Below are positions 1,049 to 34,457 of a stretch of 64,000 bases of DNA, in pieces. The notes beneath the pieces were generated by a model that saw only the letters and a program-made list of their open reading frames with translations, was not told the DNA's origin and searched no databases. The number at the start of each line of letters is the position of its first letter. The stretch's first letter is position 1. Made by a program: the position numbers and the translations under genes. The stretch covers positions 1 through 64,000 of IMG/VR virus record IMGVR_UViG_3300042305_001773. One strand, written 5' to 3'.

Positions 1049-1474
1049 TCAGGTAGTGGGCGGGTTAAGACCAAGGCCCGTAAACAGCTTTACGTCGGAA
1101 GCCTTGAGGCGACCATCGCGGGCACCCACATACCCGCTCGTCAGGCTGGCTCCCGGGTCGTAGCTGGCGGCCTTTGTGGTCACCGGCGTACCCAGACGAG
1201 CCATTTCAGCTGCGTTTTTATGTGCAGCTAATTTGATAACAAGTTCCATCGTGCGCACCGGATCTTGAAGAGCGGCGGCAAGCGCCTCCTTCTGGTGGGC
1301 CTCGATCCGCTCGTTCTCCACGCACGCCTTGACGGCTTCGGGGATCAGGTGAGCCAGCTTCTCGCTGGTTTCAACCTGCGCCTTTTCGGCGGCGGCGGCT
1401 TTGGTCATCGCGGCATCGGAGTAACCGATGTAGTCGATGATTTTCTGTACGAGCGCGTTATTTTCGGTAGACAT
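1049..1474 (-). CDS. Head assembly protein (hypothetical, KxA-rich)
   Basis: Helical 141 aa; GGAGG RBS; position in head operon. Confidence 0.45.
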   Translation of the reverse strand: MSTENNALVQKIIDYIGYSDAAMTKAAAAEKAQVETSEKLAHLIPEAVKACVENERIEAHQKEALAAALQDPVRTMELVIKLAAHKNAAEMARLGTPVTTKAASYDPGASLTSGYVGARDGRLKASDVKLFTGLGLNPPTT

Positions 1475-1490
1475 TAAAACCTCCGTGTGA

Positions 1491-2828
1491 TCAACGATTC
1501 ACGAGTTCGATGACGTGCTGCTTCATCATGTCCCGCAGCTGGCGCGAACGCTTTGTGCGAGCTTCTTTGACTTGGAACTTGCCAGCACGCTTAAAGTTTA
1601 CAACAGCACGACCGATGGCGTCTAAATCTTTAGCGGCCGCCATCTTCGGCTCTTCCATCGGCGGCATGGCGGCTTCAGGCGCAGCACCAGCTTCCGGCGG
1701 CATACCGCCTTCGGCGCCACCACCAGCACCGGACAGCGCCTGCAGTAAAGCTTCCGGCGGAATGCCCAGCTCTTCAAGCGCCATTGCCAGCTCTTGAACA
1801 GCTTCGTCTTCAGACGGCTCACCGGCAGCTTCGGGCGACGGTCCGCCTTCGGCACCCATCATGGCCTCAAGACCAGCGGGTGCGCCGCCAGCAGCAGCGT
1901 CATCAGCCGGAGCGTCGCTCATACCAGAAGCGGCGTCTTCAGGCGCAGAGTGATCCTCACCTTCGGTAGCTTCTTCTGTCGGATCAGCCGCGGCGGCCTT
2001 GGAGTTTACAAAGCCGATGAACAGGTCAGCCATCTCGTCAGCTTCGCGAATCGTGTTAGCGCACACGTCGCGAACAGACGCTTCAGCGGCTTCCTTGTCG
2101 AGACCAAGATGCGCGGCCAACTCGTAACCAGCTTTGAACGCGGCAGCCTTGTCGCTGCGAAGCGCGGCAAGATCAGAACCTTCGATCTTGCCATCGTTGT
2201 CGGTGTCGAGTTTGTGCTGGTCGCCCTTCAGCGCGCCGGTCGACTCGCTTTTTTCTTCAGACTTCTCTTCGGTCTTTTTCTTTAAAAAAGCCGGCATCTC
2301 AGCCGCCTTCTCATTGTTCAGCTTGCTGGCGCCGAAGTTGATGAGGTTAGCGAGAATGTCGTTACCGAGGGCGCCAGCGCGATCGCGGGCTTCCTTGAAC
2401 GTGACCGAGCTGTACTTCTCGCCGTCGTTAGCCTTGACCGGCGACGACGTGCCCGGGTCATCCTTATCGCCCTTGAAATCTTTTTCGTTGGAGGGGTCTT
2501 CGCCAGTGGCCTTGGCCGAGACGCCGATGTTCGTTTGAACTTCGTCTTGGCGGCCCTCTTGCGACATCTCCGGTGTGTTGTCTACAGCAAGAGCACCCTG
2601 CTGCTTCTTGACGTCAGCTTCATACTCGCTGGCGCGCGCACCGGTGCTGGCGTTTTGAACGCCGTTGTCAGCGCTAGTCGTCGGATGCGAAGAAGCACCT
2701 TGGTATCCACCCGGATCAGCGGGCACGGGACCGGCAGACTTCTCAGCCGCAGTCTTAACAGGGCTTTGCGCAATCTCGGCGGCGAGAGCGTTGAGTTGAT
2801 CGAACAGTGAACGTTGCATCCGTGCCAT
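1491..2828 (-). CDS. Putative scaffolding protein
   Basis: Acidic, Ala/Pro-rich, low complexity, many KxA motifs; lies between protease and capsid genes. Confidence 0.55.
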   Translation of the reverse strand: MARMQRSLFDQLNALAAEIAQSPVKTAAEKSAGPVPADPGGYQGASSHPTTSADNGVQNASTGARASEYEADVKKQQGALAVDNTPEMSQEGRQDEVQTNIGVSAKATGEDPSNEKDFKGDKDDPGTSSPVKANDGEKYSSVTFKEARDRAGALGNDILANLINFGASKLNNEKAAEMPAFLKKKTEEKSEEKSESTGALKGDQHKLDTDNDGKIEGSDLAALRSDKAAAFKAGYELAAHLGLDKEAAEASVRDVCANTIREADEMADLFIGFVNSKAAAADPTEEATEGEDHSAPEDAASGMSDAPADDAAAGGAPAGLEAMMGAEGGPSPEAAGEPSEDEAVQELAMALEELGIPPEALLQALSGAGGGAEGGMPPEAGAAPEAAMPPMEEPKMAAAKDLDAIGRAVVNFKRAGKFQVKEARTKRSRQLRDMMKQHVIELVNR

Positions 2829-2871: not shown

Positions 2872-4329
2872 TCATGTGACATAATTTTGCAATACACAGT
2901 GGTTTGCTGTCAACCAATTGTTTCCGTATTTCTCGCAGATGGCGGCGTAAGCAGCGATCTTATACAACGCGTAATGTTGCGCAAGAGCTGTTTCTGCTTT
3001 TCCACTCGCTTGCTTGTCGGACGGAAACTCAATTGCCCGGGCGTTACGAAGCGCAGCTAAGTATGCACGTTTCTCAACGCTGACGGGTAATACGCTATGT
3101 GTGTGGGCTACCTTTTCAGCCCACACGCGCACGCTTTGCGGCGCCGCATCAGCTGGAAAGTATACATTGTTTTCAAGCGTCGTGACGATATCTACGTCGT
3201 TAGCGAGCTTTGAAAACACGTTAGGCAGCGCATACGCAACTGCACTAACAAGTGTGGCGTTAGCTGACTTAACTGTCAACGCTAAAAAATCTCGCAGCGG
3301 CAAGATTACGCCAGCGTCGGCCAGTCCGCGTAACACCTCAGACATTTTAACAGAAGGGGTGTTATTTGTATCAATAGCCGGCTGTACTTCGCCGGAGCTG
3401 GCGAGCGCGGTCTGGGCCCAGTTACCGTTGGCGCCTGCATCCTTCTCCGCCTGCGCGAGCTGTGTTAACGCCTCTAACTGTGTCTGGACCCGCGCGGCGG
3501 GGGTACGGCCGAGGTCAAACCCAAGCGGCGCTGTAATACCCAGTTGCTCGGCTAACTCGGCGCCGGAAACGCAGCTACTTGAAGCGGCTTTTTGCAGTTG
3601 ACCAGATACATAGGCAATACGGTCGGCCGGGCGAAACACGTGGCTGATATCAAAAAACGTCGGATTCGGGTTATCGGCGTGTAGTACGTGGCCGTCTTCC
3701 AGCACCCGCCCCATGTTGTGCTTTAATCCGCCGGCCTTGCAGTGACCGCCGTTTTCAACCGAGTCGCAATATTCAGCGCGGGTCTTCGCCGTGTTGCCGC
3801 AAGATGAACACTTGTCGAACGGGATCTTGCAGGCCATCGACACGGCGATCTCTTTGTCGTTGGCCAGCTTTTCTAGTTCTTTGTCCGCGATCAACCCGCC
3901 GTTCCTGTCCGCGGCTTCTTTGGAGCCGTTTAGCGCCACGACTAACTCAATGCGTTTCATAGGTTCGTGATAGGCGCTGGCCTTTACGATACCGAAACTC
4001 TTAGCGGGGTTTTTGTTGGCGTGATCACGATAAAAGCGGGAGAATTTCTCAAACGTCTGGTGGTAGTTCCGGCAGCAGTCGCGCGTAAAACCGTCGCCGT
4101 TACGATTCGGGCCGTAGTCTTCCGTAGCGCCAATCGCGATCATGTGGACCGGTACTTCGTCTTTGGCAAACTTGATGTTTTCAAGCTTGTGCGCAAACTC
4201 GGCGCCGGCGCGTTTGACGAGGTCCTGCTTGTCGGCGCCGATAATACCGCGGCTAGATACTTTGATCAGCGCGGCAACGGGCTCGCTAAAATCCTGAGCG
4301 TGCGGCTGAATAACCTTGATCATGCTCAT
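2872..4329 (-). CDS. Putative prohead (capsid maturation) protease
   Basis: NRNGDGF, YRDHAN and VSMAC..DKCSSCG motifs (His/Ser catalytic candidates plus Zn ribbon); position upstream of scaffold and capsid. Confidence 0.65.
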   Translation of the reverse strand: MSMIKVIQPHAQDFSEPVAALIKVSSRGIIGADKQDLVKRAGAEFAHKLENIKFAKDEVPVHMIAIGATEDYGPNRNGDGFTRDCCRNYHQTFEKFSRFYRDHANKNPAKSFGIVKASAYHEPMKRIELVVALNGSKEAADRNGGLIADKELEKLANDKEIAVSMACKIPFDKCSSCGNTAKTRAEYCDSVENGGHCKAGGLKHNMGRVLEDGHVLHADNPNPTFFDISHVFRPADRIAYVSGQLQKAASSSCVSGAELAEQLGITAPLGFDLGRTPAARVQTQLEALTQLAQAEKDAGANGNWAQTALASSGEVQPAIDTNNTPSVKMSEVLRGLADAGVILPLRDFLALTVKSANATLVSAVAYALPNVFSKLANDVDIVTTLENNVYFPADAAPQSVRVWAEKVAHTHSVLPVSVEKRAYLAALRNARAIEFPSDKQASGKAETALAQHYALYKIAAYAAICEKYGNNWLTANHCVLQNYVT

Positions 4330-10402: not shown

Positions 10403-10483
10403 GGCCAGCCTCCATGCTGCGCTCAAAATTAGACACAGCATTAATTTACTGCGTCGAAGTCCCTATATCCTACAAAAACAGGC

Positions 10484-13343: not shown

Positions 13344-16300
13344 TTACGTATTATCTTCCACAATATGCACCGGGGTGTCCACCTCTATTTCGCCGCGTCG
13401 GTATGCCTGTACGGCATCCTGCTTGCTACGAAACACGCGGGGTTTGGCTTTTTTACTGATCCGACTGGACGCCAAGTATAACCCAGTCTGGTAGTCTTTG
13501 TTCGGAACGTAGTGCGCGCGAAAGGTAGACGCAGCAAACAAATTTTTGCTCGGCAGCATCTTTTCAACGGCTTCTTTCGCGGCGTCTTCTGTACTTGGGA
13601 CGTGATACTGCATCGCGTCTCCGTCGAAGTCGGCGCCAAACCCCTTGGTGATCACGGGGTTTACTTCCATAACTTTGTTCTTCGTCAGCTTAGGGTAAAA
13701 CGCCATCATGCCGTAACGGTGTAAAACAGGCGCGCGATTAATAACAATCGGTCGCGACGACATCTGACGGTCAAGCTCGGCGAACGCTTCTTTATTCTTA
13801 TCTTCAACCGCCTGCATCGCCTGCATGCGCGGGAGGCCCCGACGGACGAGGCCGCGGACGACAAACGGTTTGTAAATGTCCCACGCTTTCTCTTCCGGTA
13901 GCGCAACCTCGTCCATATCCAGATCGGGGTTTGGTGTGATGACAGCGCGGCCGACGAGATCTACCGTCGAGCTAAGCAGTTTGCGCTGAACGGTGCCGTA
14001 CTTTGGCGAGTTACCGAACACGTGCCGCAGGAAACCTTTGACATTACGCTCGACGTTCTTGGGCTGCTGCGGCTCGCCTAACCCGGTAACAGCCTTCATT
14101 GAGTCGTACACACTTAGCCGCTCGTCGCCGTAATCAGTTAGCGCGCCAGATGCTTCTTTCAGCGTGTCGTTGGCGTCGAGCAGTTCTTTGTACAAATAGT
14201 TAGCATCAGCTACGAGCGGGAGCTTTTTACTTCCCATTGTGCTCACGGGACGGAAGAGCGGCGGCAAGACTGGTACTTTACTGATCATCCAGTCTTTAGG
14301 GTGCACGCCGGTTGTTTCAGCACTCTTCAAAAAACCCAGCCGGCGCACGGCAGCGTCGCGTAGCGTCTTGCGCCCGGACTTGATATCTAAACGAGCCTGC
14401 TCAATTGCCTTCGGTAAGTTAATTCTTTCGAGCGCGGCTTTGATCGCTGTCGGGCCGGTTTTATCGCCCAGCTGCTCTCGGCCGGCCAGCACACCGCGGA
14501 ACTGCTTCTCGGTCAGGCCAAGCACACGGCGAATCGGGTCTTCCATGACGGGGTTAGGCAGCGGCTCGTGCAACGTGATCTTGCTCCACCGATTACCGCC
14601 GTGACCGCCTGTTAATGTCTCGTCAAACAGCCCGCCTGCAATAGGCTTGAGCCGCCCTTTCCAGTCCACGGTCTCGGAACTCTTTAGCTCGCGCGCGCCT
14701 GCCAGCTCGTCGACGTCTTTGTCGGTCATCGCCATCAAGTTTGAGCGCGTACCCTTGCGCACAACGTTGATACCCGACGCCTTGAGTTGGGTGACAAACT
14801 TCTCGTAAACGTGCGGTACTTTAGGCAGCGGCGGCGTATATCCGGCCATGAACTGCGACCAGTATTCGGGGTTAGCTTGGCCGCGCACCATCTTGGCATC
14901 GCGAATAACCTTGCCGGCACCGTGTGACAGTAACGCGCCCAGATCCAACATGCCGATGCGCTTGGCGCCTTCGCTGCCACCTTTTGCTGGTGTACCTTCG
15001 GCGGTATACGCGCCCATCGACCGGCCTTGCGCCTTTGACTCGCTGGTGTGGTGCAACTTCATGAAGAACCGGTTGCCAGTGAGGACGCCGCCGATTTTAC
15101 GTCCAGTTTCTGGATCGATAACGTCTTCGGTATCTGACAGGCCGTGCGCTGCTAATTCTTTCTGCGCAAACTCAATCAGGTCGCGTTTGTTATCAAAGTC
15201 CTTGAGCTTGTACGGTTTGCCAGTCTTTGCCGCAACTTTACCCAGCGCAGCCTCGATAACTTGCGTCGGGTTAATGCGGCTGATCAGACCCAGCGGCGAG
15301 ACAAGAACTTCAAACGGGTTACCATCGCGATCCTTGGGCATCTGGTCGTCAGGTACGATCTCGGCAACGACGCCCTTATCACCGAAGCGCCCCGTGAGCT
15401 TATCGCCGACGTCCATGGGTGCTTGGTTCTTCACTACAACGCTCACACCCTTCTTGGTGTGCATAACGTCGGTCACGATACCGGGGGCATGATGCTCCCA
15501 CGTGATTGTCTCGTTGGTGAAGTTACCGGCACGCCCACGATGCACTTTGCCGTACACCGTGTCTTTCTTCTTTGCCACAAGCACAAGTGGATCACCAAAC
15601 TTAACCTCAGTGCCCTTTTTGATGGCGCCGTCGTCGTCAAAGTTGTCGAGATACTTTTTGTCGTACTCAGTCGGGAACAAACTCACGAACGCCTTCTTGC
15701 CAACGTGAGTGTTGTCGTCCCACTCGGCTTCGTGCTGATACATGTGCTCAGACGTCAGCCGCTTGGATGCAGATTCAGAAATAACTACCGCGTCTTCGTA
15801 GTTCTTGCCGCGAAACGGCAGATACGCCGTACGTAGATTAAGCCCTAGCGCGGCGCTGCCGTTTTGGTCAGTAAAGTTTGACCGCGCCAGCAGCTGTCCG
15901 GGTTCGACTGTGTCACCCGGTTTCACAAGCGGCGTCTGGTGTAAAAACGTTTTACGGTTGTACGGCATTTCGTTGTACAGATCGATCGTCTTCTTGTTAC
16001 CATCTTTGTCGCGCAGCACGATACCGTCAGGTGTCACGTCCACTACTTGTGCCCGCTCAGTAGCCCGTGTGGCGCCCAGCTTCTCGCCCATCTCGTCTTC
16101 GTGCGACACGCTTTCGTCGTCAGCCTTGGCAGACTGCAACAGCGGCGCCTCGGCGTTTACGAGCGGAAGCGCCTGCGTAAACATTCGGCTACCCATGATC
16201 ACGCGATGACCTTTGATCATGGATTTAATCGGCACCATGTTTGTGAGCGCCGAAAACGTCGTGTCCATGTTGGGCAGACTGAACTGCGCTTCTTTTTTCG

Positions 16301-21266: not shown

Positions 21267-21722
21267 TCACGCAGTCGGTTCTTCGCCCTTGGTTTCGGCA
21301 ACCAACGTCACACCCAACGAACCCGGCTGCGCAGGCGGGAGTGTGTCTTCCGCTACGAACGCCAGTACGGCCGGCTCCGAGCGATTACCCGCGTCGTCAA
21401 TATCAACAACACGCAACTCAACCGATGAACCCTGCTCGACCAGCACGTCACCAAGCTCTGTCACCGTCGGCTCGTACGCGCGGACCTCGCGGGCAACGTC
21501 GGCACCATTTACGTATACAGACAGCTCGCGCGTGACGACGTCCGCATCAACAACCGGCCCGACCGAAACACGATACGTCAGAATATCAGCCATGTTTGTA
21601 TTACTCCTGATTTGAACAACTCTTAACTTTGCGGGCGATAACGGCGCGGCTAAAAATTGCGCCATCACCACCAACAACCACACCACCAAGCACAGTAAAA
21701 CAGCGGCGAGGATAGCGCCCAT
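21267..21722 (-). CDS. Hypothetical protein with Fn3/Ig-like domain
   Basis: DDAGNRSEP motif; N-terminal hydrophobic segment; alternative start at 21593 with AGGAG. Confidence 0.5.
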   Translation of the reverse strand: MGAILAAVLLCLVVWLLVVMAQFLAAPLSPAKLRVVQIRSNTNMADILTYRVSVGPVVDADVVTRELSVYVNGADVAREVRAYEPTVTELGDVLVEQGSSVELRVVDIDDAGNRSEPAVLAFVAEDTLPPAQPGSLGVTLVAETKGEEPTA

Positions 21723-21723
21723 G

Positions 21724-22176
21724 TTATTTGGCCGTCACGACTGAACTCGCGATAATATCGCACGCCTCTCCTAGTTTTTTAAGCGTTTCCGGGGTGCCGG
21801 GCATGACGTCATCAGTGCCGATGGCTGTTTTGAATACGCGCTCGATCGCGGCGTCGAGCCCCGGATACTTGTTGACCTGCTCAATCGCCAGATCAAGTGT
21901 GTGCCCGTGCACTTCTTCCCACTTTTCTGTCGTTGTGATGCGAGCAGGCGCTGTCGGGCGCTGCAACACCTTTTTTAACGACGTATAAACATCGTAGATA
22001 CGCGCGCGGTCGGCCGCGTCGCTGCCCGTGAGCAGCTTCACGATTTCCGCGTCAACCGGAGCCGACGCCACGACCGGACGTACGACCGGCGGTTTGACTA
22101 CGGGTAACTGCGGCCCATTCGGAAAAACGAGCGACAGGAACAGTAGTAGACCAGCCGCAAGCACAAGCTTTTTCAT
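21724..22176 (-). CDS. Membrane-anchored/secreted protein
   Basis: Signal-like N-terminus. Confidence 0.55.
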   Translation of the reverse strand: MKKLVLAAGLLLFLSLVFPNGPQLPVVKPPVVRPVVASAPVDAEIVKLLTGSDAADRARIYDVYTSLKKVLQRPTAPARITTTEKWEEVHGHTLDLAIEQVNKYPGLDAAIERVFKTAIGTDDVMPGTPETLKKLGEACDIIASSVVTAK

Positions 22177-22457
22177 ACAACACCCTTCGACGGTTGTTCG
22201 TACTCCACAATAACACGAAGCAATGCGGTGCAGGCGTCAACACCTTCTTTGCATCCTTCGGCGGCCAGCTTGTCGCGCAGCTTAGTCACCGCCATGATGT
22301 CTTCAACAAGCGGGACCGCAATCGACGACTGCACGTTGGGTGTCGCGGCTACCAACGTGGGGCGCACCCACTTAAGCCGGGTGGCGATTTCTTTACGATA
22401 CGCCACAACTGCAAGCACAACAAACAGAGCAGCACTAAAAAGTTGAAACGATGTCAT
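22173..22457 (-). CDS. Membrane protein
   Basis: N-terminal TM segment; GGAGGAG RBS. Confidence 0.55.
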   Translation of the reverse strand: MTSFQLFSAALFVVLAVVAYRKEIATRLKWVRPTLVAATPNVQSSIAVPLVEDIMAVTKLRDKLAAEGCKEGVDACTALLRVIVEYEQPSKGVV

Positions 22458-22492
22458 AACTCCTCCAGTATGAATTCACTTTTGCTATTTTA

Positions 22493-23320
22493 TCACGTTT
22501 GCGGCACAAGCACATACGGACGGCCGTTAATTACTAACGTGCCGTTTATCTGCAGACCGGCGTCTTTAGTGATGGGATATGCCGTGGTGCGCTTACCATA
22601 TAATTTGATGATTTCAGCCGTGTCGCCGTCTTGTGGCTTTGTTACGTTGGGGTCGTAGTACGGCGCCATCAGGTTACCGTTAGCCAGATGCGGTAAACCG
22701 AGCGCGTGACCAAGTTCGTGGCAAATAACCGCCACAGCCATGTTGAACGACCAGTCTTCGGCTTCGTCAAACATCTGGTCGAGCTGTACGTTTTCTGCGA
22801 CGCCACACGGCAGCTCGCTCCACGCCAGCGTGCCGCCTTTGTTATCTAAACCGCTTTTCTTGCCGGTCCCAGAACGAGCGTAGATATTAGCTTTTTTGTG
22901 CGTGTCAACGCGCACGGGATCAATCGCGCACACCTCAGCCCACTGCGAAAACGCAATGTCGTAAGCCTCGGCCACCTGCGCCGTTGTTAATCCCGGTAAA
23001 TGAATCTCGTGGTAGTACGAGATGTTGGGCATCGGCCATTTGCACGGATCGCCGCCGGGCGCTGTGATGTTGAAATCCGGCAACCCGCAGCGCCGCCGAT
23101 TGATACGATGCGCGGTCTTCGGGCCAACGGTACCTGTCGGATTCAGCCCGTTGAATTCCTGAAACGCCCGAATCGCTTTCTGCAGCTCAGCGCCTTTGAG
23201 CTTTTTAACCTGCGTAAGCGTCTTGTCGCCAAAATACCCCAGCGCATGAAGCCGCCGTAAAATTTCACTAATCGGCAGAACGTGCGGCTCGGGGGTGTGG
23301 TGTGTTGGCTTCCGTGCCAT
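22493..23320 (-). CDS. Matrixin (M10) metallopeptidase with PG-binding-like prodomain
   Basis: AIRAFQEFNGLNPTG, cysteine switch RRCGLPD, HELGHALGLPH, Met-turn LMAPYY. Confidence 0.88.
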   Translation of the reverse strand: MARKPTHHTPEPHVLPISEILRRLHALGYFGDKTLTQVKKLKGAELQKAIRAFQEFNGLNPTGTVGPKTAHRINRRRCGLPDFNITAPGGDPCKWPMPNISYYHEIHLPGLTTAQVAEAYDIAFSQWAEVCAIDPVRVDTHKKANIYARSGTGKKSGLDNKGGTLAWSELPCGVAENVQLDQMFDEAEDWSFNMAVAVICHELGHALGLPHLANGNLMAPYYDPNVTKPQDGDTAEIIKLYGKRTTAYPITKDAGLQINGTLVINGRPYVLVPQT

Positions 23321-23340
23321 AATGCGCTTCCTTGCAGAGG

Positions 23341-23745
23341 TTATTGCGCGGCAGCCAACTCCATAAGCCCTGTTGCCGCGGCGTCATCGATTGTATCACT
23401 CAGCGTATAGACGGCGCCAACAACTGGGTTATCCCGCTGATATTCGACACCTGTTTTTGCGCAGTGTTCACGCCACACGTTATTTAAACGCCGACGTAAA
23501 CGCATCAGCTTGCGCGGGGGCAGGGTACGCAGCTCACGCATGCTCTGCTGAATAGCGTCATCCGTGTTCTGCTCTTTGCAGTGAATGATTACCTGCACAA
23601 TGATCGAGATGATCATGATGATGGTAATCGGATCAAACTGATACGAGTTGTTACCCTGAGCGACAAGCTCGTCCGTGAGCTTGTCTCTCAGGGCTGCCAG
23701 CGCAGGCGACTCGTTCACGCGGCGCTGCAGTTCTTCTGTAGTCAT
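23341..23745 (-). CDS. Membrane protein
   Basis: Ile-rich TM segment. Confidence 0.55.
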   Translation of the reverse strand: MTTEELQRRVNESPALAALRDKLTDELVAQGNNSYQFDPITIIMIISIIVQVIIHCKEQNTDDAIQQSMRELRTLPPRKLMRLRRRLNNVWREHCAKTGVEYQRDNPVVGAVYTLSDTIDDAAATGLMELAAAQ

Positions 23746-24116
23746 CAGTTGGCCGTCCGTTCGGCGCGCATCTTCTCGACGGCAACCGCTTCCATGTAGC
23801 GATACCGCGCGTCAATCATCTGGGCGCGGATCTCGGTCCGGCCGGCGATGTACTTCCAAATCAGCGCGCTGTTGAGCACGACAATCTGCGTAGCGCCGAT
23901 AATTGCGGTAATCGCCTTGGTCAGCGTCTCGGCTTGCGATTGATCCACCCAGCCAATGAGCACAGCTACCGCCACCAGATTCGTCAGCGCACCGACAGCC
24001 ATCGTCCAAAACTCGGGCGTCAACCAGTTACCGGAGTCAACGTTGGCGTCATCGGCGGCAGCGTTTAAAACACGAAGCTCTTCGCGAACAGTCTCAACAC
24101 TTTTTTTGGTAGCCAT
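23745..24116 (-). CDS. Holin-like membrane protein
   Basis: Two TM helices after TPEFW motif; AGGAG RBS. Confidence 0.5.
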   Translation of the reverse strand: MATKKSVETVREELRVLNAAADDANVDSGNWLTPEFWTMAVGALTNLVAVAVLIGWVDQSQAETLTKAITAIIGATQIVVLNSALIWKYIAGRTEIRAQMIDARYRYMEAVAVEKMRAERTAN

Positions 24117-24179
24117 AACTTCTCCTAGAAAAAAGACGTGGTCGTATTGTACCGAACCCAAAATAACATGCAACACAAG

Positions 24180-25224: not shown

Positions 25225-25494
25225 TCAGCTTAAACCCATTAAAAACCGCACAAACACAAAAATCCACGCAAGCAAGCCGCTAATAGCAAAAAAAACCACA
25301 ACCGCGCTCAGGCTGACAACACGCCCGAGCTGCTGAATCGGAATTTCGCGCAACAACCGCCACGCTTTGAGGTAATCAATCGCGCCCGGTTGTTTAGGTG
25401 GCTCCGGCGTAGGTTCGGGGTTCGGTTCCGGCGTTACCGGATCTTTTTTACGCCCAAGGAGGTCACGTAATTTATCAAACAGCGCGTTAGCCAT
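25225..25494 (-). CDS. Membrane protein
   Basis: PE-rich linker, C-terminal TM segment. Confidence 0.5.
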   Translation of the reverse strand: MANALFDKLRDLLGRKKDPVTPEPNPEPTPEPPKQPGAIDYLKAWRLLREIPIQQLGRVVSLSAVVVFFAISGLLAWIFVFVRFLMGLS

Positions 25495-27325
25495 TCTTTT
25501 TACTCCAGCTTTGAATGGTGTCAAAGACGTCGTTGCCGTACAGCTGCGTCGCTTTGTCCAGCATGTTCATCTGCGGCAGTGTTCCAGTCGCGGCAGCCTG
25601 CGCCATTTGATATCTGTACTGCGGATCGAGCATCGAGCGATACAGGTGCGACTTCTGACGCGCGGCCAGAATGAAATCGCCGCGCTGCTTGGCCTTAAGC
25701 AGGTGATCGGTCACGTTTGCAAAGACCGGTTTGTTGTGGTCGTAGACAAACGGCGTCCGCAAATCGAGCAGGTTGCGGAACTGCTGCGCATATACGCTGC
25801 CTGTTGCTGCTTTCACGTGCGAACCTACGACTCCGGCCGGCGCATGAAACCGAAACTTCGTCGGTGTGTGCGTGATACCCTTGTATTTCGGCTTTGGATC
25901 GTCCACGTGCCAGTCTTGCGGTGATTGCGCAATTAATCGCCGCAAGATCTCGTGCTTTCGGTCATATTCGCGGCGATCAGAGTGCGTTTTCGCCGCACGT
26001 AACTCGTCCAGCGTGTTTGGTTTCTTTGTGCTGGGCTCTTCTTCTGCGCCCTTCTCTATTTCTTTGACTTTTTCGTAGTACAGGGGGTCTTCTTGCAGAT
26101 GATCCTTGGCAATTTCTTTGGCGACTTGATCGTTTCTTGTGTGCTCGTGCTCATGTTTAGCTCCTTCGGCTAAAGCTGGGGCAGAAAAATCCCGATCGGG
26201 TAAATTATCGGCTTCACCGCCCGGTAACAGGTCTTTTTGTCCCGAGCGGGAAAGTTCGGTGGCGGCTGTCTTAGCGACCACGGGCGCAAGCAGCTTTTTG
26301 ATGTCGGGGCCGATGTAGTCGTCGCCTTCGGGCAGGCCGGGCGCCAACGTGATGTAAGGATCGGAGCCGACTGTCGCTTTAAACACTCCCGGCTTGAGTT
26401 TGTGTTTTGCCAGCTCTAAGTAATGCTCATGCGTTTTTGACGGGTCGTTGCCCAGTGCGCGAAACGCGGTCGGTTTTACTTTGACGCCAAGTTCTTCGAA
26501 CAACTCGCGCGCCGCGGCTTGCTCCGGCGTCTCTCCTGTTTCCACGCCACCGCCGATAAAACGCCGTTTTCCGAGATTGTCGGGCCATTTTGGATTAGTA
26601 AGCGTTTCAAGCAAGTACTTATTTTCGTACGGTAACACAACGCGCACGCGAGGTTGTGGTGCGTCGGCAGCGGCTTTTAGCTCCCCCCTACTGATGGGGT
26701 TACTAAACCTATGCTCTTCCGTCGTTTCGGCAGGGGTTTCGTAACCCTTGGACTTACCGTTGTCGAGCAACACGCCTTTGCGGCGGGCGGCGACGGTAAT
26801 GTGGAACGGATGGTCGTCGTTGGGAAGTGCGGATAGGCCGTAACTCTTGCGCAGCGCCGAAAGCGCCGGACTGCTGACTTGCACGGCCCAGACTTTGCTT
26901 ACGCCATCTACGTTTTTGACGTCGATTTCTTTCAGGCCGCCCAGCGTGTAGCCGAACATGTGGCCGCGCTCATTGATCTTGTCAGCACCGATAGATGCTA
27001 CCTCATCCGCCGTCATCACCGATATATGCGCATTTACGAGATCGCCCTTAACGTTTGGAACGTTAAACACGCCCGCTGTCGGTAATTCAGCGCCGGGCTC
27101 GGTCAGGGCGTCGAACACACCGCGGACGAGCGCGTTCGGTACAGATAACAAAAGCCAGCCAGATTTGGCGAGATAGAGACGGCCGGCGAGCGGATAACTC
27201 GTGGCGGCCTGCTTGTTGCCGCTGCGATAGAGCCAGCCGAGCGCGTTACCGGCAATATAGGCAGGATGCTCGCGAAAGTAATGCGGTTCCCAAGCGAGCG
27301 GGTCGAGTGCTGAGAGGCTATCCAT
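25487..27325 (-). CDS. Multidomain protein: 2H phosphoesterase + Nudix hydrolase + DUF5661-like + unknown domains
   Basis: HISV/HITV pair; Nudix box GGVETGETPEQAAARELFEELG; EHEH...EIAKDHLQEDPLYY; domains separated by KQA, KAA, KTA, KGA, KAA. Confidence 0.8.
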   Translation of the reverse strand: MDSLSALDPLAWEPHYFREHPAYIAGNALGWLYRSGNKQAATSYPLAGRLYLAKSGWLLLSVPNALVRGVFDALTEPGAELPTAGVFNVPNVKGDLVNAHISVMTADEVASIGADKINERGHMFGYTLGGLKEIDVKNVDGVSKVWAVQVSSPALSALRKSYGLSALPNDDHPFHITVAARRKGVLLDNGKSKGYETPAETTEEHRFSNPISRGELKAAADAPQPRVRVVLPYENKYLLETLTNPKWPDNLGKRRFIGGGVETGETPEQAAARELFEELGVKVKPTAFRALGNDPSKTHEHYLELAKHKLKPGVFKATVGSDPYITLAPGLPEGDDYIGPDIKKLLAPVVAKTAATELSRSGQKDLLPGGEADNLPDRDFSAPALAEGAKHEHEHTRNDQVAKEIAKDHLQEDPLYYEKVKEIEKGAEEEPSTKKPNTLDELRAAKTHSDRREYDRKHEILRRLIAQSPQDWHVDDPKPKYKGITHTPTKFRFHAPAGVVGSHVKAATGSVYAQQFRNLLDLRTPFVYDHNKPVFANVTDHLLKAKQRGDFILAARQKSHLYRSMLDPQYRYQMAQAAATGTLPQMNMLDKATQLYGNDVFDTIQSWSKKNG

Positions 27326-27339
27326 AGCGCGCTTTCAAA

Positions 27340-27411
27340 CTGCCTGAGTAGGACTCGAACCTACAACCCCAGCATTAACAGTGCCGTGCACTACCATTGT
27401 GCTATCAGGCA
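27340..27411 (-). tRNA. tRNA-Asn(GUU)
   Basis: Cloverleaf; TGCCTGA/TCAGGCA acceptor; CTGTTAA anticodon loop; GTTCGAG T-loop; CCA not encoded. Confidence 0.92.
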
Positions 27412-27548
27412 ATGCGTGTCACGGGGTCGCGCTAATACTTGGTGTCGTCATACCCCTGACAGCGTGATGTGAAACTGCCGCGTAGGCCGACACTAGCAGC
27501 AAGAGGCAAAACACAGCGGAAGCGCCCCAAGCGGCTACGCTCAATTGT

Positions 27549-28781: not shown

Positions 28782-29816
28782 TCAAAGAATCTTGGCGGCG
28801 ATCAGGCAGCCCCGCGCGACAGCGTGCAGCGGATCTTTGGCGTGGCGAACTTCTTTCACCGGCAGCGGAAAACCATTCTCCGCAAGTTTCTTAGTGAACA
28901 TCTCCACGAAACCTTTGGCACGCGTTGTTCCGCCGGCTAGAGATATCAAAATCGGCTCTTTGAACTTGGGCAGCGCCTTGTGGTCACGGAGCGCAGAGGC
29001 GAGCTGCTTTGTCGTGTAATCGATTAAACGCTCGTAGTACACGCTCACGGCAGCAAGGATCGCGTTGTCTCCGCCGCCCTCACCAATCACAAACGTGCCG
29101 TGCTCTTTCTCCGCCTGAACTACCGAGTCCGGCTCGTTAGTTGCCACCGCGGTCATGCGGTCGATCCAGTCACCTGACTTGGTCGTCGAGAACAGCACCG
29201 TGGGCTCGCCGTTGAGCATCACGCACACGTTCACCATACCGGCGCCCCACGACAGGCCGATGCCGGTATAGTCGTCGTGCTCTAGCTCCGAGTAGCACAG
29301 CGCTTCGGCTTCGTTGATAGCCCGGGCGGCGTATCCCTGCTCAGCCAGCACCGTGCGCACCACGTCTTCGTGATACGCCACGTCGAAGTCGTCGTCTTCT
29401 TGGTCGACGGGCTGTGCCGGCACACAGAAGATCAGCTTTTCGTGGGGTGTGCTAGCCGTGCCGACCACTTCCTTGAGGATAAACGCCAGCACGCGCTTGG
29501 CTTCCTTTTCCTTGGGGCTGACGACACCACGGTACATGGGACGCTTGGCCGAGTCATTGCGCTCGACAGCTTTCTCGATGGCGTCTTGGCCGAGAATGAT
29601 AAAACTCCCGTCGGCGTCCTTTACGAAGACTTTGCCCTGCAGCCCCTTTTCGATCATCTTCGTGGCCACGGGCGTCGTCGGCTTGATGACGTAGAACGCA
29701 TCGCGAAAGTCTTTGTACTGCACGTTGCCGACCGTGTGCGGATCGGTCGTGGAGTTTGCGGTGGCGTCTTGGGCCAGCACGATAAACGATGTTCCGACGT
29801 CTAAACCTTTAGCCAT
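28782..29816 (-). CDS. Actin-like ATPase (MreB/MamK-related fold)
   Basis: Phosphate-1 GLDVGTS, connect INEAEA, phosphate-2 SWGAGMVN, adenosine LAGGTT. Confidence 0.85.
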   Translation of the reverse strand: MAKGLDVGTSFIVLAQDATANSTTDPHTVGNVQYKDFRDAFYVIKPTTPVATKMIEKGLQGKVFVKDADGSFIILGQDAIEKAVERNDSAKRPMYRGVVSPKEKEAKRVLAFILKEVVGTASTPHEKLIFCVPAQPVDQEDDDFDVAYHEDVVRTVLAEQGYAARAINEAEALCYSELEHDDYTGIGLSWGAGMVNVCVMLNGEPTVLFSTTKSGDWIDRMTAVATNEPDSVVQAEKEHGTFVIGEGGGDNAILAAVSVYYERLIDYTTKQLASALRDHKALPKFKEPILISLAGGTTRAKGFVEMFTKKLAENGFPLPVKEVRHAKDPLHAVARGCLIAAKIL

Positions 29817-32017: not shown

Positions 32018-32560
32018 TCAGCTCCGTGAGTCCATGTTGTTTAACTTCCGTGCTTGCCGCAGATCGACGTCGGCCAGAATGCGCTGGATGTGCCGAGCGT
32101 CTTCGTAGCTATCCTGCAACTGATCTTCGTAGAACACTTCGAGATACGCTGCGGCGACTTTGTCGTCGAGCGACTTGAGTTGTTCAAGCCGTTTGGCGTA
32201 GGTCACAACCACTTGGCGTTCCAGCGTGTGCGCCTCAATTAAGATATCTTCGACGCGCGTGTACGTCTGGAACGGATGGCCGCCGGCACAAGGCTGAACG
32301 AAGTTAAACCCGTACAAGCAGTCCAGAAACTGCTGCACGTGATTTAGCTCGCCTTTGGCTGCTTCTGTGAGGAATTCTTTGTACTCTTCAGCGTGCAGGC
32401 CAGTGACAGCGCTGGCGTGATACAGATAGAACTGCAGATGCGTCCACTCGTTCTGCAGGTCTTCATTAATTAGTGTGACGAACTGGCCAATTGTGTATAC
32501 GCCCGGCTCGCCTTCGGGTCCGGGTTCGCCACTGTGGTTCGTTACTCCTGCGTCGGACAT
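32018..32560 (-). CDS. Ferritin-like/bacterioferritin-like protein
   Basis: NEW...Y, ELNH, LE..Y and EDARH diiron pattern. Confidence 0.75.
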   Translation of the reverse strand: MSDAGVTNHSGEPGPEGEPGVYTIGQFVTLINEDLQNEWTHLQFYLYHASAVTGLHAEEYKEFLTEAAKGELNHVQQFLDCLYGFNFVQPCAGGHPFQTYTRVEDILIEAHTLERQVVVTYAKRLEQLKSLDDKVAAAYLEVFYEDQLQDSYEDARHIQRILADVDLRQARKLNNMDSRS

Positions 32561-33084
32561 AGCAACTGCTCCTTCAGGTAAGCCGCAAGGCGTTGGGCCT
32601 GCGGTGTTTCTTCACGAATGATTTGTTCGTAACAGACTGCGCCGTACTGCCGAAAGATCTGCACGTTATTGACGAACCAGCCCATATGGTAACCAGCACG
32701 CATAAAGTTGACCAGATGATTTGTGGCCTCTTCGTCATACACATAGTTCTGACAGCCGAACTTGTGCGCCCAGTACTCTTTGGGTTGGCAGTTAATGTGC
32801 CCGTGTCCGCCCTGCCCCGGAAGTGCCGCGCTAAAGATAATCGTGGGCGCCGTCTGCACTAACTTCTGCACAAACAGGTCCGCGAGTTCCGGGTTAATAT
32901 GCTCAGCAACTTCAAGGCATAGGCAGATATCATAACCCCGGCACATGTCGAACTGCGGGTCAAACACGCTGAACTTATCGTGCGGACAGGCTGGATCAGG
33001 GTCGACGCCGTCTACGATGAAACCAGCGGCGCGGAGTGCGTCGACGTAAATACCGGGACCGCAGCCGACATCAATAATTTCCAT
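32542..33084 (-). CDS. SAM-dependent methyltransferase
   Basis: DVGCGPG, CLEVAEHI, PGQGGHGHIN. Confidence 0.85.
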   Translation of the reverse strand: MEIIDVGCGPGIYVDALRAAGFIVDGVDPDPACPHDKFSVFDPQFDMCRGYDICLCLEVAEHINPELADLFVQKLVQTAPTIIFSAALPGQGGHGHINCQPKEYWAHKFGCQNYVYDEEATNHLVNFMRAGYHMGWFVNNVQIFRQYGAVCYEQIIREETPQAQRLAAYLKEQLLCPTQE

Positions 33085-33685
33085 GCGTGTACGTCTCCGG
33101 CAGCTGATGTAATCCGGGCAGATCAACAGGCGGCCGGATCACCTTAGACACCGGCACGTTCCAGCAGTCCCACTTGTACTTCCAGCCGTTGTGGCTCGTG
33201 GGGTCGACCTCGCCTTTGCGCCCGAACGTGGCGATATCAAAGAACGCTTTTTTAGGCATGAATCCCAGCAACCACGCGCGCTCGCAGTCTTTGTGAATGC
33301 GCGCAAAACAGTACCAGTCACAGAGCTGCCGGACATTCGCGTCGCAGACCGTGCAGTTGTAGAAGTCCCGCGGAACCTCGTCATAGTTCTGCAGCTTCGT
33401 TTTGACGTCAATACGCCCCAAGAGCGTGTCGCGCAGATCCCAGTGATATACATCGTCGCCAGTCGAGCGTTCCCACTGTTGCGCATAGAAGTCATGCACA
33501 ACTTCCTCGCCCAAGAGTCCCGTAAACACGCCGTAGCCAGCGCGAATCGAGTCGTTTAAATGCGCGCGGCCGTATTTTTTCAGCAGCCGCGCCTCCATCT
33601 CGTCCACCCGCGCCAGTGCCCGCTCTAGCTGCTCGGATGTAATAAACACTTCAATAACATGCTGCGTTAATACAGCAGAAGTCAT
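33071..33685 (-). CDS. Hypothetical protein, PD-(D/E)xK-like
   Basis: GLLGE...D...IDVKT pattern. Confidence 0.5.
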   Translation of the reverse strand: MTSAVLTQHVIEVFITSEQLERALARVDEMEARLLKKYGRAHLNDSIRAGYGVFTGLLGEEVVHDFYAQQWERSTGDDVYHWDLRDTLLGRIDVKTKLQNYDEVPRDFYNCTVCDANVRQLCDWYCFARIHKDCERAWLLGFMPKKAFFDIATFGRKGEVDPTSHNGWKYKWDCWNVPVSKVIRPPVDLPGLHQLPETYTHGNY

Positions 33686-33749
33686 ACGCGTCCTTTCACT
33701 TCGGGGTGGGCGAAGTGTAGCGCGTATATTCACCGCGTGCAATACGCCG

Positions 33750-34457
33750 CTACAGCTTTTTAAGCATGGCAGCGACAAGCGGATGACGCACGACGTCACT
33801 GTGGGCAAACTGCACAACATCAATGCCCGCGATGCCCTTGAGTTTCGTCACCACTTCATTCATCGGCGGCGGTGAGATTGGTAAGTCCGTCTGCTGCGGA
33901 TCACCGGTCACGATAATCTTCGAGTTCTGCCCGAAGCGCGACAGAAACAGCTTGAACTGCGTATACGTGGCGTTTTGGGCCTCGTCAAATACGCAGATTG
34001 AATCATTGAATGTCCGGCCGCGTAGATAACATAACGGCGCGAGCACCACCGCCCGATTTACAAACTCACGCTTGGGGCCGAACTTGCCGAGTAGCGTGTC
34101 CATGGCGTCGTACAGCGGTTGCATGTACGGATTGACCTTCTCACCAAACGAGCCCGGAAGATAGCCGAGCTTTTCGCCGGCGTCCACGATTGGCCGGGTG
34201 AGCACGATTGAGGTGGCACGTCTGGCCAGCACCTCATTGATAGCAAAAGCCATCGCCAGAAACGTCTTGCCAGAACCAGCCGAGCCGAGCAAGAACGTGA
34301 TGTCGTTTTCGTTTAATGTTTTCCACGCGCGGCGCTGTGTTTCCGTGCGCCATTCAATATCACACGGCGTCAGCGCAGCTTTAACTTTTTCTTGCTGGTC
34401 TTGGCGTTTCTTCTCTTTTTTCTCGGCGCGGCGGGTAGGCCGTGATTTGGGCGCCAT
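33750..34457 (-). CDS. phoH: PhoH-family ATPase
   Basis: GSAGSGKT, LGYLPG, RGRTF, DEAQN, TGDPQQTD, RHPLV. Confidence 0.95.
   Translation of the reverse strand: MAPKSRPTRRAEKKEKKRQDQQEKVKAALTPCDIEWRTETQRRAWKTLNENDITFLLGSAGSGKTFLAMAFAINEVLARRATSIVLTRPIVDAGEKLGYLPGSFGEKVNPYMQPLYDAMDTLLGKFGPKREFVNRAVVLAPLCYLRGRTFNDSICVFDEAQNATYTQFKLFLSRFGQNSKIIVTGDPQQTDLPISPPPMNEVVTKLKGIAGIDVVQFAHSDVVRHPLVAAMLKKL

What the first reader, a model, noticed from the sequence alone, without database searches (positions are those of the whole stretch)
25487..27325. 2H-phosphoesterase + Nudix polyprotein: candidate injected anti-defence kit
Seen: leader-KQA-[2H domain with HISV/HITV]-KAA-[Nudix]-KTA-[DUF5661-like]-KGA-[unknown]-KAA-[unknown]; no Cys seen. 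Established: phage Acb1 is a 2H phosphoesterase that destroys CBASS cyclic nucleotides, and Nudix enzymes cleave nucleotide signals and caps. Inference: signal-degrading enzymes delivered with the DNA before any gene expression.
Basis: partly seen in the sequence, partly recalled or inferred. Interest (0 to 1): 0.75.

Follow-up and report, generated by a model that had tools for sequence, protein, structure and literature searches.

The report
Phage multi-enzyme polyprotein with cut-here junctions
An uncultured 205-kb lake phage encodes a string of small enzymes (a 2H phosphoesterase, a Nudix hydrolase and others) joined by a conserved Lys-x-Ala motif that looks like a protease cut site, probably a swappable counter-defence kit; that it travels inside the virus particle is inferred, not shown.

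Summary
Window 25487-27325 (-) is one 612-aa, cysteine-free ORF. Its order is 40-aa leader, 2H phosphoesterase (HIS/HIT), Nudix (perfect Nudix box), DUF5661, then two unnamed modules, with K-x-A at all five junctions.

Five KxA is only the chance count for this protein (5.1 expected). Placement and conservation are not chance:
- Cutting 121 relatives at every KxA gives discrete modules.
- A 92%-identical relative lacks exactly the Nudix module plus one KxA.
- Codons at the sites vary.
- KxA is about 25-fold depleted inside the 2H and Nudix cores.
- The structure model puts the sites at domain borders.
- KxA is the most enriched of all 400 a-x-b patterns in the phage's head-assembly genes, which include a prohead-protease-like gene.

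The 2H module belongs to Pfam 2H-SAK. That is a large family (890 clusters at 50% identity) seen only in uncultured phages, at one syntenic site, with very variable partner domains.

It fits the published "polyvalent protein" concept. The K-x-A junction code appears unreported in my searches.

Capsid packaging, cleavage and substrate are inferred. Acb1 cannot be told from LigT (Z 5.7 versus 4.7). An RNA-end-repair role is the main rival.

The parts
25487..27325 (-). Whole ORF, 612 aa plus stop: the modular 'Swiss-army-knife'/polyvalent polyprotein
27206..27325 (-). Leader, aa 1-40, ending in K38-Q-A40. Predicted helices aa 9-34, then an 11-residue coil that holds the KQA. Candidate propeptide or targeting peptide.
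   Evidence: Conserved as a 39+/-2 aa unit in 126 proteins. In distant family members a K-x-[A/G] lies exactly 13 residues before the GRLY strand in 82 of 111. No paralogue in this genome. Model.
26669..27205 (-). 2H phosphoesterase module, aa 41-219. Folded core about aa 46-183, disordered tail aa 184-220, ending in K217-A-A219.
   Evidence: Pfam 2H-SAK. Invariant residues. The top 25 structural matches are all 2H proteins, best Z 5.7. pLDDT is below 50 for aa 184-220.
27020..27028 (-). First catalytic H-x-S motif (H100-I-S102)
   Evidence: N98, A99 and H100 invariant; I101 and S102 at least 90% conserved
26795..26803 (-). Second catalytic H-x-T motif (H175-I-T177)
   Evidence: F134, H135 and T137 of the module alignment (aa 174, 175, 177 of the protein) are invariant
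26264..26668 (-). Nudix module, aa 220-354, ending in K352-T-A354. Optional in the family.
   Evidence: Pfam NUDIX. Foldseek E 1.9e-5, probability 1.0, to MutT, ADPRase and RppH. Present in about half of the close relatives, and absent as one precise unit in P0002.
26483..26551 (-). Nudix box G259-V281 (GX5EX7REUXEEXGU), complete
   Evidence: Read from the translation and aligned to MutT-type boxes
26045..26263 (-). DUF5661 module, aa 355-427, ending in K425-G-A427. A three-helix unit with a conserved E-x-E-H-T ... A-K-E-I-A-K-D-H-L core.
   Evidence: Pfam, invariant residues, model. The same domain occurs inside the 2039-aa polyvalent protein of virus Rctr197k, together with InPase, DUF7178 and a LigT-like 2H domain.
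25805..26044 (-). Unnamed module U1, aa 428-507, ending in K505-A-A507
   Evidence: Conserved even in 25-30%-identical family members (P0218, P0239). No Pfam, Atlas or PDB relative found.
25490..25804 (-). Unnamed helical C-terminal module U2, aa 508-612
   Evidence: 134 copies, 103+/-8 aa. Model helices aa 534-610. No relative found.
2872..4329 (-). Candidate maturation (prohead) protease. The N-terminal ~250 aa carry invariant H103 and S164. K247-A-A is invariant at the domain end. The tail has further conserved KxA sites.
   Evidence: Atlas feature hits to Peptidase_S77, S78 and S80 clusters score 0.90-0.92, and the model of the nearest cluster matches HK97-type proteases at TM about 0.6. 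This is a lead only. KxA 12 versus 4.7 expected. Conservation.
1049..2828 (-). Two scaffold-like acidic proteins (141 and 445 aa) dense in conserved KxA
   Evidence: 6 versus 2.0 and 10 versus 5.8 expected. In the 445-aa protein, 10 of 10 KxA lysines are at least 90% conserved against 10 of 22 other lysines.
27339..27412 (-). tRNA-Asn(GTT) gene, 14 nt upstream of the ORF on the same strand (context only)
   Evidence: ARAGORN

Best explanation
The ORF is the hallmark polyvalent ('Swiss-army-knife') polyprotein of a large clade of uncultured freshwater ~200-kb myophages.

Shown from sequence: it is a string of autonomous modules (leader, 2H phosphoesterase, Nudix, DUF5661, U1, U2). Each junction carries a K-x-A(/S) motif that is selected at the protein level, and modules are inserted and deleted at these motifs during evolution.

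Inferred:
1. K-x-A is the recognition site, in a P3-x-P1 register, of the phage's assemblin/HK97-type maturation protease (candidate ORF 2872-4329).
2. The precursor is taken into the prohead by its conserved leader and/or its constant C-terminal modules.
3. It is cut into separate small proteins inside the capsid.
4. These proteins leave with the DNA.
5. At the very start of infection the 2H enzyme opens cyclic or 2'-5' phosphodiester species, and the Nudix enzyme splits nucleoside-diphosphate-X compounds. Candidate substrates are cyclic-oligonucleotide or ADP-ribose-derived defence signals, NAD-derived products, and RNA 5' caps or ends. This would blunt host nucleotide-based immunity before phage genes are expressed.
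For: Modularity at KxA:
- Splitting 121 relatives at every KxA gives clean module families with narrow length ranges (leader 39+/-2 aa, Cys-rich 35+/-2, kinase 189+/-1, U2 103+/-8) and about 40 different architectures.
- Q and P0002 are 92% identical and differ by exactly one Nudix module plus one KxA.

Selection on the peptide, not the DNA:
- Lys and Ala codons vary between sites and between genomes.
- Inside the 2H and Nudix cores, KxA is seen 6 times against 156 expected. RxA and KxS are similarly depleted.
- The KxA sites are conserved islands in otherwise variable linkers.

Independent domain borders:
- The AlphaFold model has pLDDT below 50 at aa 184-220, 353-362 and 430-432.
- All five KxA sites lie in or within 5 residues of inter-domain coil.
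- Extrapolating the Pfam profiles to their ends places the Nudix N-terminus near aa 221 and the DUF5661 C-terminus near aa 426.

Link to head maturation:
- In the head gene block 1049-10441, KxA is the most enriched of all 400 a-x-b patterns (56 versus 29, z=5). It is not enriched in the rest of the proteome.
- Across 36 related loci, KxA lysines are more conserved than other lysines (42/61 versus 102/227, p=0.0014).
- The block contains a prohead-protease-like gene whose catalytic domain ends in an invariant G-x-L-x-K-A-A, much like the G-E-L-K-A-A after the 2H module.

Precedent:
- T4, phiKZ and SPN3US prohead proteases use P3-x-P1 motifs.
- They remove N-terminal propeptides from ejected head proteins, trim their own C-terminus and shred the scaffold (PMC10052503).

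Polyvalent kinship:
- DUF5661 is shared with a 2039-aa InPase/2H protein that lies beside a structural gene in virus Rctr197k.
- Long family members carry InPase, LigD_N, SNF2, GNAT and C39-like peptidase domains.
- Published work predicts that such 2H domains are injected to degrade nucleotide signals (PMC5512222 section 20; PMC9503650).

Other points:
- The locus is constant while its content is hypervariable. Distant members (1188 and 2913 aa) sit at the same place upstream of the fused RNAP.
- No RNA ligase, RtcB, ATP-dependent ligase or KptA was found in this genome.
- The protein is Cys-free, as are the RNAP subunits and a 1566-aa protein.
Against: - There is no direct evidence of cleavage, virion presence or any substrate.
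- No cultured relative exists, so no proteome can be consulted.
- The gene lies about 15 kb from the head block. Its immediate conserved neighbours look like a lysis cassette (M10 peptidase with a PG-binding domain, small membrane proteins), not head genes.
- The protease assignment is only a lead: no Pfam, PHROG-function, NCBIfam or PDB sequence hit.
- The major capsid protein was not identified, so the classic capsid-propeptide site could not be checked.
- The leader has no paralogue in the genome, unlike shared capsid-targeting sequences.
- The leader is modelled with fair confidence (pLDDT 76-89) and could be part of the 2H fold.
- KxA enrichment in the variable tails of distant family members is modest (333 versus 279, z=3.2).
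- Related sequences are not independent samples, so the depletion and enrichment figures overstate significance.
- The 2H model is mediocre (pLDDT 70) and all matches have Z below 6.
Confidence: 0.45

Rival explanations
1. It is an intracellular nucleic-acid end-healing or RNA-repair kit that is not packaged. The 2H module acts as a 2',3'-cyclic phosphodiesterase, the optional P-loop kinase as a 5'-OH kinase, and the Nudix module as a 5'-end or cap pyrophosphohydrolase. Together they restore tRNAs or the phage's own tRNA and tmRNA after attack by host anticodon nucleases. K-x-A would then be cut by a phage or host protease in the cytoplasm, or serve only as a linker.
For: - The Pfam family is named for the 'Swiss Army Knife' proteins (2H-SAK).
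- Partner domains in the wider family include LigD 3'-phosphoesterase (8/46), ATP-dependent ligase (4/46) and a shikimate-kinase-like P-loop kinase. From my own knowledge, this mirrors the kinase plus 2H pair of Trl1.
- The phage carries 9 tRNAs and a tmRNA, and a tRNA-Asn lies 14 nt upstream of the ORF.
- The structure comparison does not separate CPDase or LigT from Acb1.
Against: - This genome has no RNA ligase (PF09414), RtcB, ATP-dependent ligase or KptA. The Rnl1 search is uninformative because its control found nothing.
- Iyer et al. note that polyvalent-type 2H domains never associate with RNA ligases (PMC5512222, section 20).
- This reading does not explain why every junction, including those beside non-enzymatic modules, keeps the same tripeptide, or why the head-assembly proteins share it.
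Confidence: 0.25
2. It is an uncleaved multidomain enzyme. K-x-A is a conserved structural linker or helix-capping element, or a binding motif, and not a protease site. The protein works as one chain.
For: - K352-T-A354 and K425-G-A427 sit at the C-terminal ends of predicted helices.
- The number of KxA in the protein equals the chance expectation.
- No cleavage data exist.
Against: - The same tripeptide ends unrelated folds: 2H, Nudix, a Cys-rich knot, a kinase and helical modules. It also ends disordered linkers such as aa 184-220.
- It is strongly avoided inside domains.
- It is enriched specifically in scaffold-like, protease and other head proteins.
- Module indels are bounded by it.
Confidence: 0.15
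3. Domain 1 is a true Acb1 orthologue: a dedicated anti-CBASS nuclease that cleaves 3'3'-cGAMP and related signals.
For: - Acb1 (7T26/7T27) is the top structural match: Z 5.7 and 5.6, 104-106 aligned residues of 137-140.
- Both have the two H-x-S/T motifs.
Against: - A profile of 55 family sequences finds no Acb1, nor any other 2H chain, in the PDB at E up to 10.
- Foldseek gives E 0.075 and TM 0.31-0.38.
- Eight other kinds of 2H enzyme score Z 4.2-5.1.
- The module is larger, about 140 folded residues plus a leader, and belongs to a separate Pfam family.
Confidence: 0.12

Closest known systems
Polyvalent proteins of phages and conjugative elements (Iyer, Burroughs, Anand, de Souza, Aravind 2017, PMC5512222); Pfam PF22547 'Swiss Army Knife, 2H phosphoesterase domain'
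   Same: - Several unrelated enzymatic domains sit in one phage polypeptide, with hypervariable architectures.
- 2H, Nudix, InPase, SNF2, GNAT and papain-like peptidase domains occur in the family.
- DUF5661 is shared with a classic 2039-aa polyvalent protein.
- The published prediction is that such 2H domains are injected and degrade nucleotide signals.
   Different: - Here the modules are separated by one short, conserved K-x-A(/S) motif that also marks the head-assembly proteins. This points to dicing by the maturation protease rather than by an embedded peptidase.
- This protein has no peptidase domain and no MuF or portal fusion.
- It has a constant frame (leader plus 2H at the N-terminus, U1-U2 at the C-terminus) around a variable middle.
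- My literature searches found no description of the junction motif.
Prohead-protease-processed internal/ejection head proteins (T4 IPI-III and Alt; phiKZ and SPN3US E proteins; PMC10052503)
   Same: - A P3-x-P1-style tripeptide motif (L/I-x-E in T4, A/S/G-x-E in phiKZ and SPN3US).
- N-terminal propeptides of 20-250 aa.
- The protease trims its own C-terminus.
- The scaffold is cut at many sites.
- Enzymes are delivered with the DNA.
   Different: - The motif is K-x-A, which I have not seen reported for a phage.
- The substrate would be cut into five or six separate functional modules, like a viral polyprotein, rather than losing one propeptide.
- Nothing has been demonstrated experimentally.
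Acb1 anti-CBASS nuclease (PDB 7T26) and other viral 2H phosphodiesterases (poxvirus cGAMP PDE 9BKQ, MHV ns2, rotavirus VP3, Burkholderia phage BCSR5 PDE 9Q2G)
   Same: The 2H fold and two H-x-S/T motifs, encoded by a virus, and the nominal best structural match.
   Different: - No detectable sequence relationship.
- It is part of a polyprotein with a leader.
- The substrate is unknown.
- The structural score does not stand above CPDase, LigT or Usb1.
Herpesvirus assemblin and HK97/T4-type maturation proteases
   Same: - The candidate protease's features and the nearest model resemble the S77, S78 and S80 families.
- From my own knowledge, assemblin cuts V/L-x-A|S, that is, small P1 and small P1'. 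This is like K-x-A followed by A, S or G here.
   Different: - Lys at P3.
- Family membership is unproven, with no profile hit in Pfam, PHROGs, NCBIfam or the PDB.

Membership tests
2H phosphoesterase superfamily / Pfam 2H-SAK (PF22547) | Two H-x-[S/T] catalytic motifs | tested here: met
   H100-I-S102 and H175-I-T177. Both His are invariant in the 55-sequence module alignment; in the 75-sequence full-length alignment they are at least 90% conserved.
2H phosphoesterase superfamily / Pfam 2H-SAK (PF22547) | Profile match above the curated cut-off | tested here: met
   36.8 bits against a cut-off of 27. All 46 long family members that were scanned also match.
2H phosphoesterase superfamily / Pfam 2H-SAK (PF22547) | 2H fold (two pseudo-symmetric lobes) | tested here: inconclusive
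   The top 25 VIA-align matches are all 2H proteins, and unrelated folds score Z of 2.8 or less. The best Z is only 5.7, and the model pLDDT is 70.
Acb1 anti-CBASS nucleases | Sequence homology to the Acb1 family | tested here: not met
   A family profile searched against all PDB chain sequences finds no Acb1 at E up to 10. tblastn against 50,697 phage records finds nothing for the 2H part.
Acb1 anti-CBASS nucleases | Structure closer to Acb1 than to other 2H clades | tested here: inconclusive
   Acb1 Z 5.7, against CPDase 5.1, phage BCSR5 PDE 4.9, LigT 4.7 and Usb1 4.6.
Acb1 anti-CBASS nucleases | Hydrolysis of 3'3'-cGAMP, cA3 and related signals | not testable with these tools
   Needs an enzyme assay.
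Nudix hydrolases (PF00293) | Nudix box GX5EX7REUXEEXGU with the catalytic Glu residues | tested here: met
   G259-V281 fits at every position.
Nudix hydrolases (PF00293) | Profile and fold match | tested here: met
   42.7 bits against a cut-off of 21.1. Foldseek gives probability 1.0 and E 1.9e-5 to MutT, ADPRase, RppH and NudC. The subfamily and substrate cannot be assigned, because all NCBIfam equivalog scores are far below their cut-offs.
Polyvalent proteins (Iyer et al. 2017) | Two or more biochemically disparate domains in one polypeptide of a phage or conjugative element | tested here: met
   2H, Nudix, DUF5661 and two further modules in a 205-kb virus record that CheckV rates 100% complete. 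Relatives add a kinase, InPase, LigD_N, SNF2, GNAT and C39-like domains.
Polyvalent proteins (Iyer et al. 2017) | Genomic or fusion link to the virion packaging apparatus (MuF, portal or capsid genes) | tested here: inconclusive
   There is no fusion. The gene is about 15 kb from the head block, with lysis-like genes and the RNAP in between, though the order is conserved across the clade. The link to the head block rests on the shared KxA motif.
Polyvalent proteins (Iyer et al. 2017) | Embedded peptidase for self-processing (frequent but not obligatory) | tested here: not met
   There is no peptidase domain in this protein. C39-like or C70 peptidase domains occur in 4 and 2 of 46 distant members.
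Maturation-protease substrates of phage heads (T4 IP/Alt, phiKZ/SPN3US E proteins) | Protease motif shared with scaffold, protease and other head proteins | tested here: met
   KxA is the top-enriched of 400 patterns in the head block (z=5), and KxA lysines are extra-conserved (p=0.0014).
Maturation-protease substrates of phage heads (T4 IP/Alt, phiKZ/SPN3US E proteins) | Presence of processed fragments in purified virions | not testable with these tools
   No cultured member exists. Only lake metagenome DNA runs hold the sequence.

The most novel reading that the evidence does not exclude
A whole clade of freshwater jumbo phages uses a 'cassette polyprotein'. Any small protein module flanked by K-x-A can be spliced into a constant frame of leader plus 2H at one end and U1-U2 at the other. 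The precursor is loaded into the capsid, cut into free modules by the head maturation protease and injected with the DNA. This would be a eukaryotic-virus-style polyprotein strategy in a tailed phage, giving a plug-and-play, rapidly evolving injected counter-defence arsenal.
Probability: 0.35. Interest if true: 0.8.

Novelty: new variant of a known kind. Interest (0 to 1): 0.62.

Why it matters
- If K-x-A is the maturation-protease code, it becomes a simple sequence rule for predicting which proteins of this large uncultured phage group are processed and probably carried in the capsid. The same rule would delimit hundreds of small modules: 310 segment clusters in 264 proteins. Many have no known function, and all are candidates for counter-defence activities.
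- It would extend the 'polyvalent protein' idea with a concrete, testable processing mechanism.
- It would add 2H and Nudix enzymes to the short list of activities delivered before phage gene expression.
- The enzyme modules are small, Cys-free and self-contained. That makes them easy to express and to assay on CBASS, Thoeris, Pycsar and type III CRISPR signals.

Tried and rejected
- **DNA-level recombination signal at the junctions.** Rejected, because codons for K and A differ between sites and between genomes.
- **The window's trypsin-like S1 protease (43767-44615) as a Lys-specific processing enzyme.** Unlikely. It has an N-terminal membrane or signal segment, and the residue six before the catalytic Ser is Met, not Asp.
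- **The M10 matrixin as the processing enzyme.** It carries a peptidoglycan-binding domain and sits among small membrane proteins, so it reads better as a lysis enzyme. This was not tested further.
- **Gene-fusion link between the neighbouring Gly-rich 346-aa protein and the Gly-zipper module inside P0218.** No detectable similarity.
- **Leader shared with other proteins of the genome, as a common capsid-targeting sequence.** A leader HMM finds only the ORF itself.
- **Function for U1 and U2.** Pfam, the ESM Atlas (best score 0.65) and a full-model Foldseek search gave nothing usable.
- **Firm identification of the protease, portal or capsid protein.** Pfam, PHROGs, NCBIfam, PDB sequence and profile searches and the Atlas gave only the protease lead and a tail-sheath hit.
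- **Cultured relatives.** None in 50,697 phage records.
- **Module-skipping variants in lake metagenomes.** No joints were seen, only co-occurring strains.
- **Literature on DUF5661, 2H-SAK or the SAK proteins.** Nothing is held. The 2016 NAR paper could not be fetched under the DOI and PMC id I recalled from memory, so I could not read it.
Full report
**What is there**

Window 25487-27325 on the minus strand is a single 612-aa ORF with an ATG start. A stop lies three codons upstream, so it cannot be longer.

Pfam finds three domains above their gathering cut-offs: 2H-SAK (aa 95-182), NUDIX (aa 244-290) and DUF5661 (aa 388-425). The two H-x-S/T motifs of 2H enzymes (H100-I-S, H175-I-T) are invariant or nearly so in relatives. 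The Nudix box G259-V281 is complete.

The protein has no cysteine. At the genome's 1.4% Cys frequency that has probability about 1.6e-4.

K-x-A occurs five times, at K38, K217, K352, K425 and K505. This is the number expected from composition (5.1), so the count itself is unremarkable.

**Where it is**

The window is the first 64 kb of a 205,044-bp IMG/VR virus record that CheckV rates 100% complete. The first 113 nt recur 131 nt from the end, as in a circular assembly.

The genome has these features:
- Genes are almost all on one strand.
- There is a tail-sheath gene.
- There is one multisubunit RNA polymerase with fused beta and beta'.
- There are nine tRNAs and a tmRNA.
- No close relative exists among 50,697 deposited phages.

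The same sequence occurs in lake and freshwater metagenomes from several studies.

**The junction motif is real**

More than 436 homologues exist, many on contigs of 192-208 kb. Their architectures differ: with or without Nudix, with a second Nudix, a P-loop kinase, a 36-aa Cys-rich unit, and others.

Five lines of evidence support K-x-A as a junction signal.
- *Clean modules.* Cutting 121 of these proteins at every K-x-A yields module families with narrow length ranges and about forty architectures. All follow the plan leader - 2H - [variable] - DUF5661 - [variable] - U1 - U2.
- *Exact indels.* A relative 92% identical to the query lacks exactly the Nudix module and one K-x-A.
- *Protein-level selection.* Codons at the sites vary, so selection acts on the peptide.
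- *Avoidance inside domains.* Inside the 2H and Nudix cores K-x-A is nearly absent (6 against 156 expected). R-x-A and K-x-S are also among the four most depleted patterns. At one junction many relatives have K-x-S or K-x-G instead.
- *Independent borders.* The AlphaFold model (pLDDT 78, pTM 0.36) shows separate domains joined by low-confidence linkers. All five sites lie in or within five residues of inter-domain coil.

These statistics use related sequences, so they overstate independence. The qualitative pattern is nonetheless unambiguous.

**Link to head maturation**

The block 412-10441 is syntenic in 36 related virus contigs. It runs on into the genes at the other end of the contig.

In that block, K-x-A is the most enriched of all 400 a-x-b patterns (56 against 29, z=5). 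It is not enriched in the rest of the proteome. Lysines within K-x-A are more conserved than other lysines (42/61 against 102/227, p=0.0014). In the acidic scaffold-like protein the figures are 10/10 against 10/22.

ORF 2872-4329 has invariant His103 and Ser164. Its protein-language-model features point to the T4, HK97 and phiKZ prohead-protease families, and the model of its nearest cluster aligns to HK97-type proteases. Its domain ends in an invariant G-x-L-x-K-A-A, very like the G-E-L-K-A-A after the 2H module. This assignment is a lead, not a proof; profile searches found nothing.

The precedent comes from T4 and from phiKZ and SPN3US. Their maturation proteases recognise a P3-x-P1 tripeptide, remove propeptides from ejected head proteins, trim themselves and shred the scaffold (PMC10052503).

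**The wider family**

A profile of the 2H module finds 890 clusters (at 50% identity) among 1.8 billion proteins. In almost all of the 150 listed hits the module starts 25-45 residues from the N-terminus of proteins of 156-2913 aa.

In 82 of 111 distant members a K-x-[A/G] lies exactly 13 residues before the first strand motif. Examples at 25-30% identity are again strings of modules ending in K-x-A, and they keep U1 and U2 at the C-terminus.

Partner domains include InPase, LigD 3'-phosphoesterase, ATP-dependent ligase, Nudix, SNF2, GNAT and C39-like peptidases.

Two distant members sit at the same place upstream of the fused RNAP. The gene is therefore a hallmark of the clade, in a fixed position with hypervariable content.

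DUF5661 also occurs in a 2039-aa InPase/2H protein that lies beside a structural gene in virus Rctr197k.

**What the enzymes are**

The 2H module has no sequence-detectable relative of known structure. Structurally, its 25 best matches are all 2H enzymes. Acb1 is first (Z 5.7), but CPDase, a phage phosphodiesterase, LigT, Usb1 and viral 2'-5' phosphodiesterases follow at Z 4.2-5.1. The Acb1-versus-LigT question therefore cannot be settled here.

The Nudix module matches MutT, ADP-ribose pyrophosphatase, RppH and NudC about equally.

The genome encodes no RNA ligase, RtcB, ATP-dependent ligase or KptA. That argues against a complete RNA-repair pathway in this phage but does not exclude end-healing.

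**Verdict**

Its key idea, modules shuffled at K-x-A, is strongly supported.

The most likely reading is a capsid-loaded, protease-diced polyvalent protein whose 2H and Nudix modules act on nucleotide or RNA-end species at the onset of infection. I put this at about 0.45 for the whole chain and about 0.7 for 'K-x-A is a protease site'.

Packaging, the cleavage register and the substrate are all inferences. The concept of injected polyvalent 2H proteins is published (PMC5512222, PMC9503650). The junction code and its link to the head protease appear unreported in my searches, so I rate this a new variant of a known kind.

Noticed in passing
window 13344-17747 (-) and 10484-12364 (-): The multisubunit RNA polymerase has beta fused to the N-terminal part of beta' (1467 aa), plus a separate beta' C-terminal part (626 aa). 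Both have no Cys at all (P about 8e-10 and 1e-4). It is the only RNAP set in the genome and lies next to the head block, so it may be a virion RNAP.
   Followed up: partly
window 59467-59807 (-) and 60031-62102 (-); 27339-27412 (-): The phage encodes a tmRNA (tag GTFNSVPALAA) beside a cluster of five tRNAs. A lone tRNA-Asn lies 14 nt upstream of the polyprotein ORF.
   Followed up: no
window 28782-29816 (-): An actin-fold protein matches Pfam Volactin (an archaeal actin) at E 8e-62. It is conserved near the polyprotein in a relative (L004).
   Followed up: no
window 21267-24176 (-): An M10 matrixin-type metallopeptidase with an N-terminal peptidoglycan-binding domain (22493-23320) sits among small membrane or signal-peptide proteins. 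This is probably the lysis cassette. It is conserved downstream of the polyprotein in relatives.
   Followed up: partly
window 43767-44615 (-): A trypsin-fold S1 serine protease with an intact H/D/S triad and an N-terminal membrane or signal segment. It appears to lack an Asp at the base of the S1 pocket.
   Followed up: partly
genome C1:158320-159564 (+) = L006:3321-4565: A plus-strand 414-aa ORF has 14 K-x-A against 3.4 expected (p about 1.5e-5), the strongest single-protein enrichment in the genome. Its function is unknown and it was not examined further.
   Followed up: no
whole genome; window 4332-6697, 40034-41344; C1:68062-70602, 187353-192053: A set of large proteins completely lacks Cys: 1566, 1467, 846, 626, 612, 459, 436 and 327 aa. 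Most other proteins have several. This may mark proteins that pass through the tail or work outside the cytoplasm.
   Followed up: partly
relatives, e.g. P0008 aa 220-255: A 35+/-2-aa module with 7 Cys, bounded by K-x-A on both sides, is present in 51 family members. It gives a weak, sub-threshold resemblance to squash-type knottin inhibitors (E 0.049).
   Followed up: no
window 1-113 and genome C1:204914-205026: The first 113 nt of the contig are repeated near its end. This is consistent with a circular or circularly permuted complete genome, although IMG/VR lists it as linear.
   Followed up: yes
window 32018-34457 (-), 41322-43556 (-): Auxiliary genes are present: ferritin-like, SAM methyltransferase, PhoH and an SNF2 helicase. 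Relatives carry ThyX, dCMP deaminase and sugar-modification genes at the same place.
   Followed up: no
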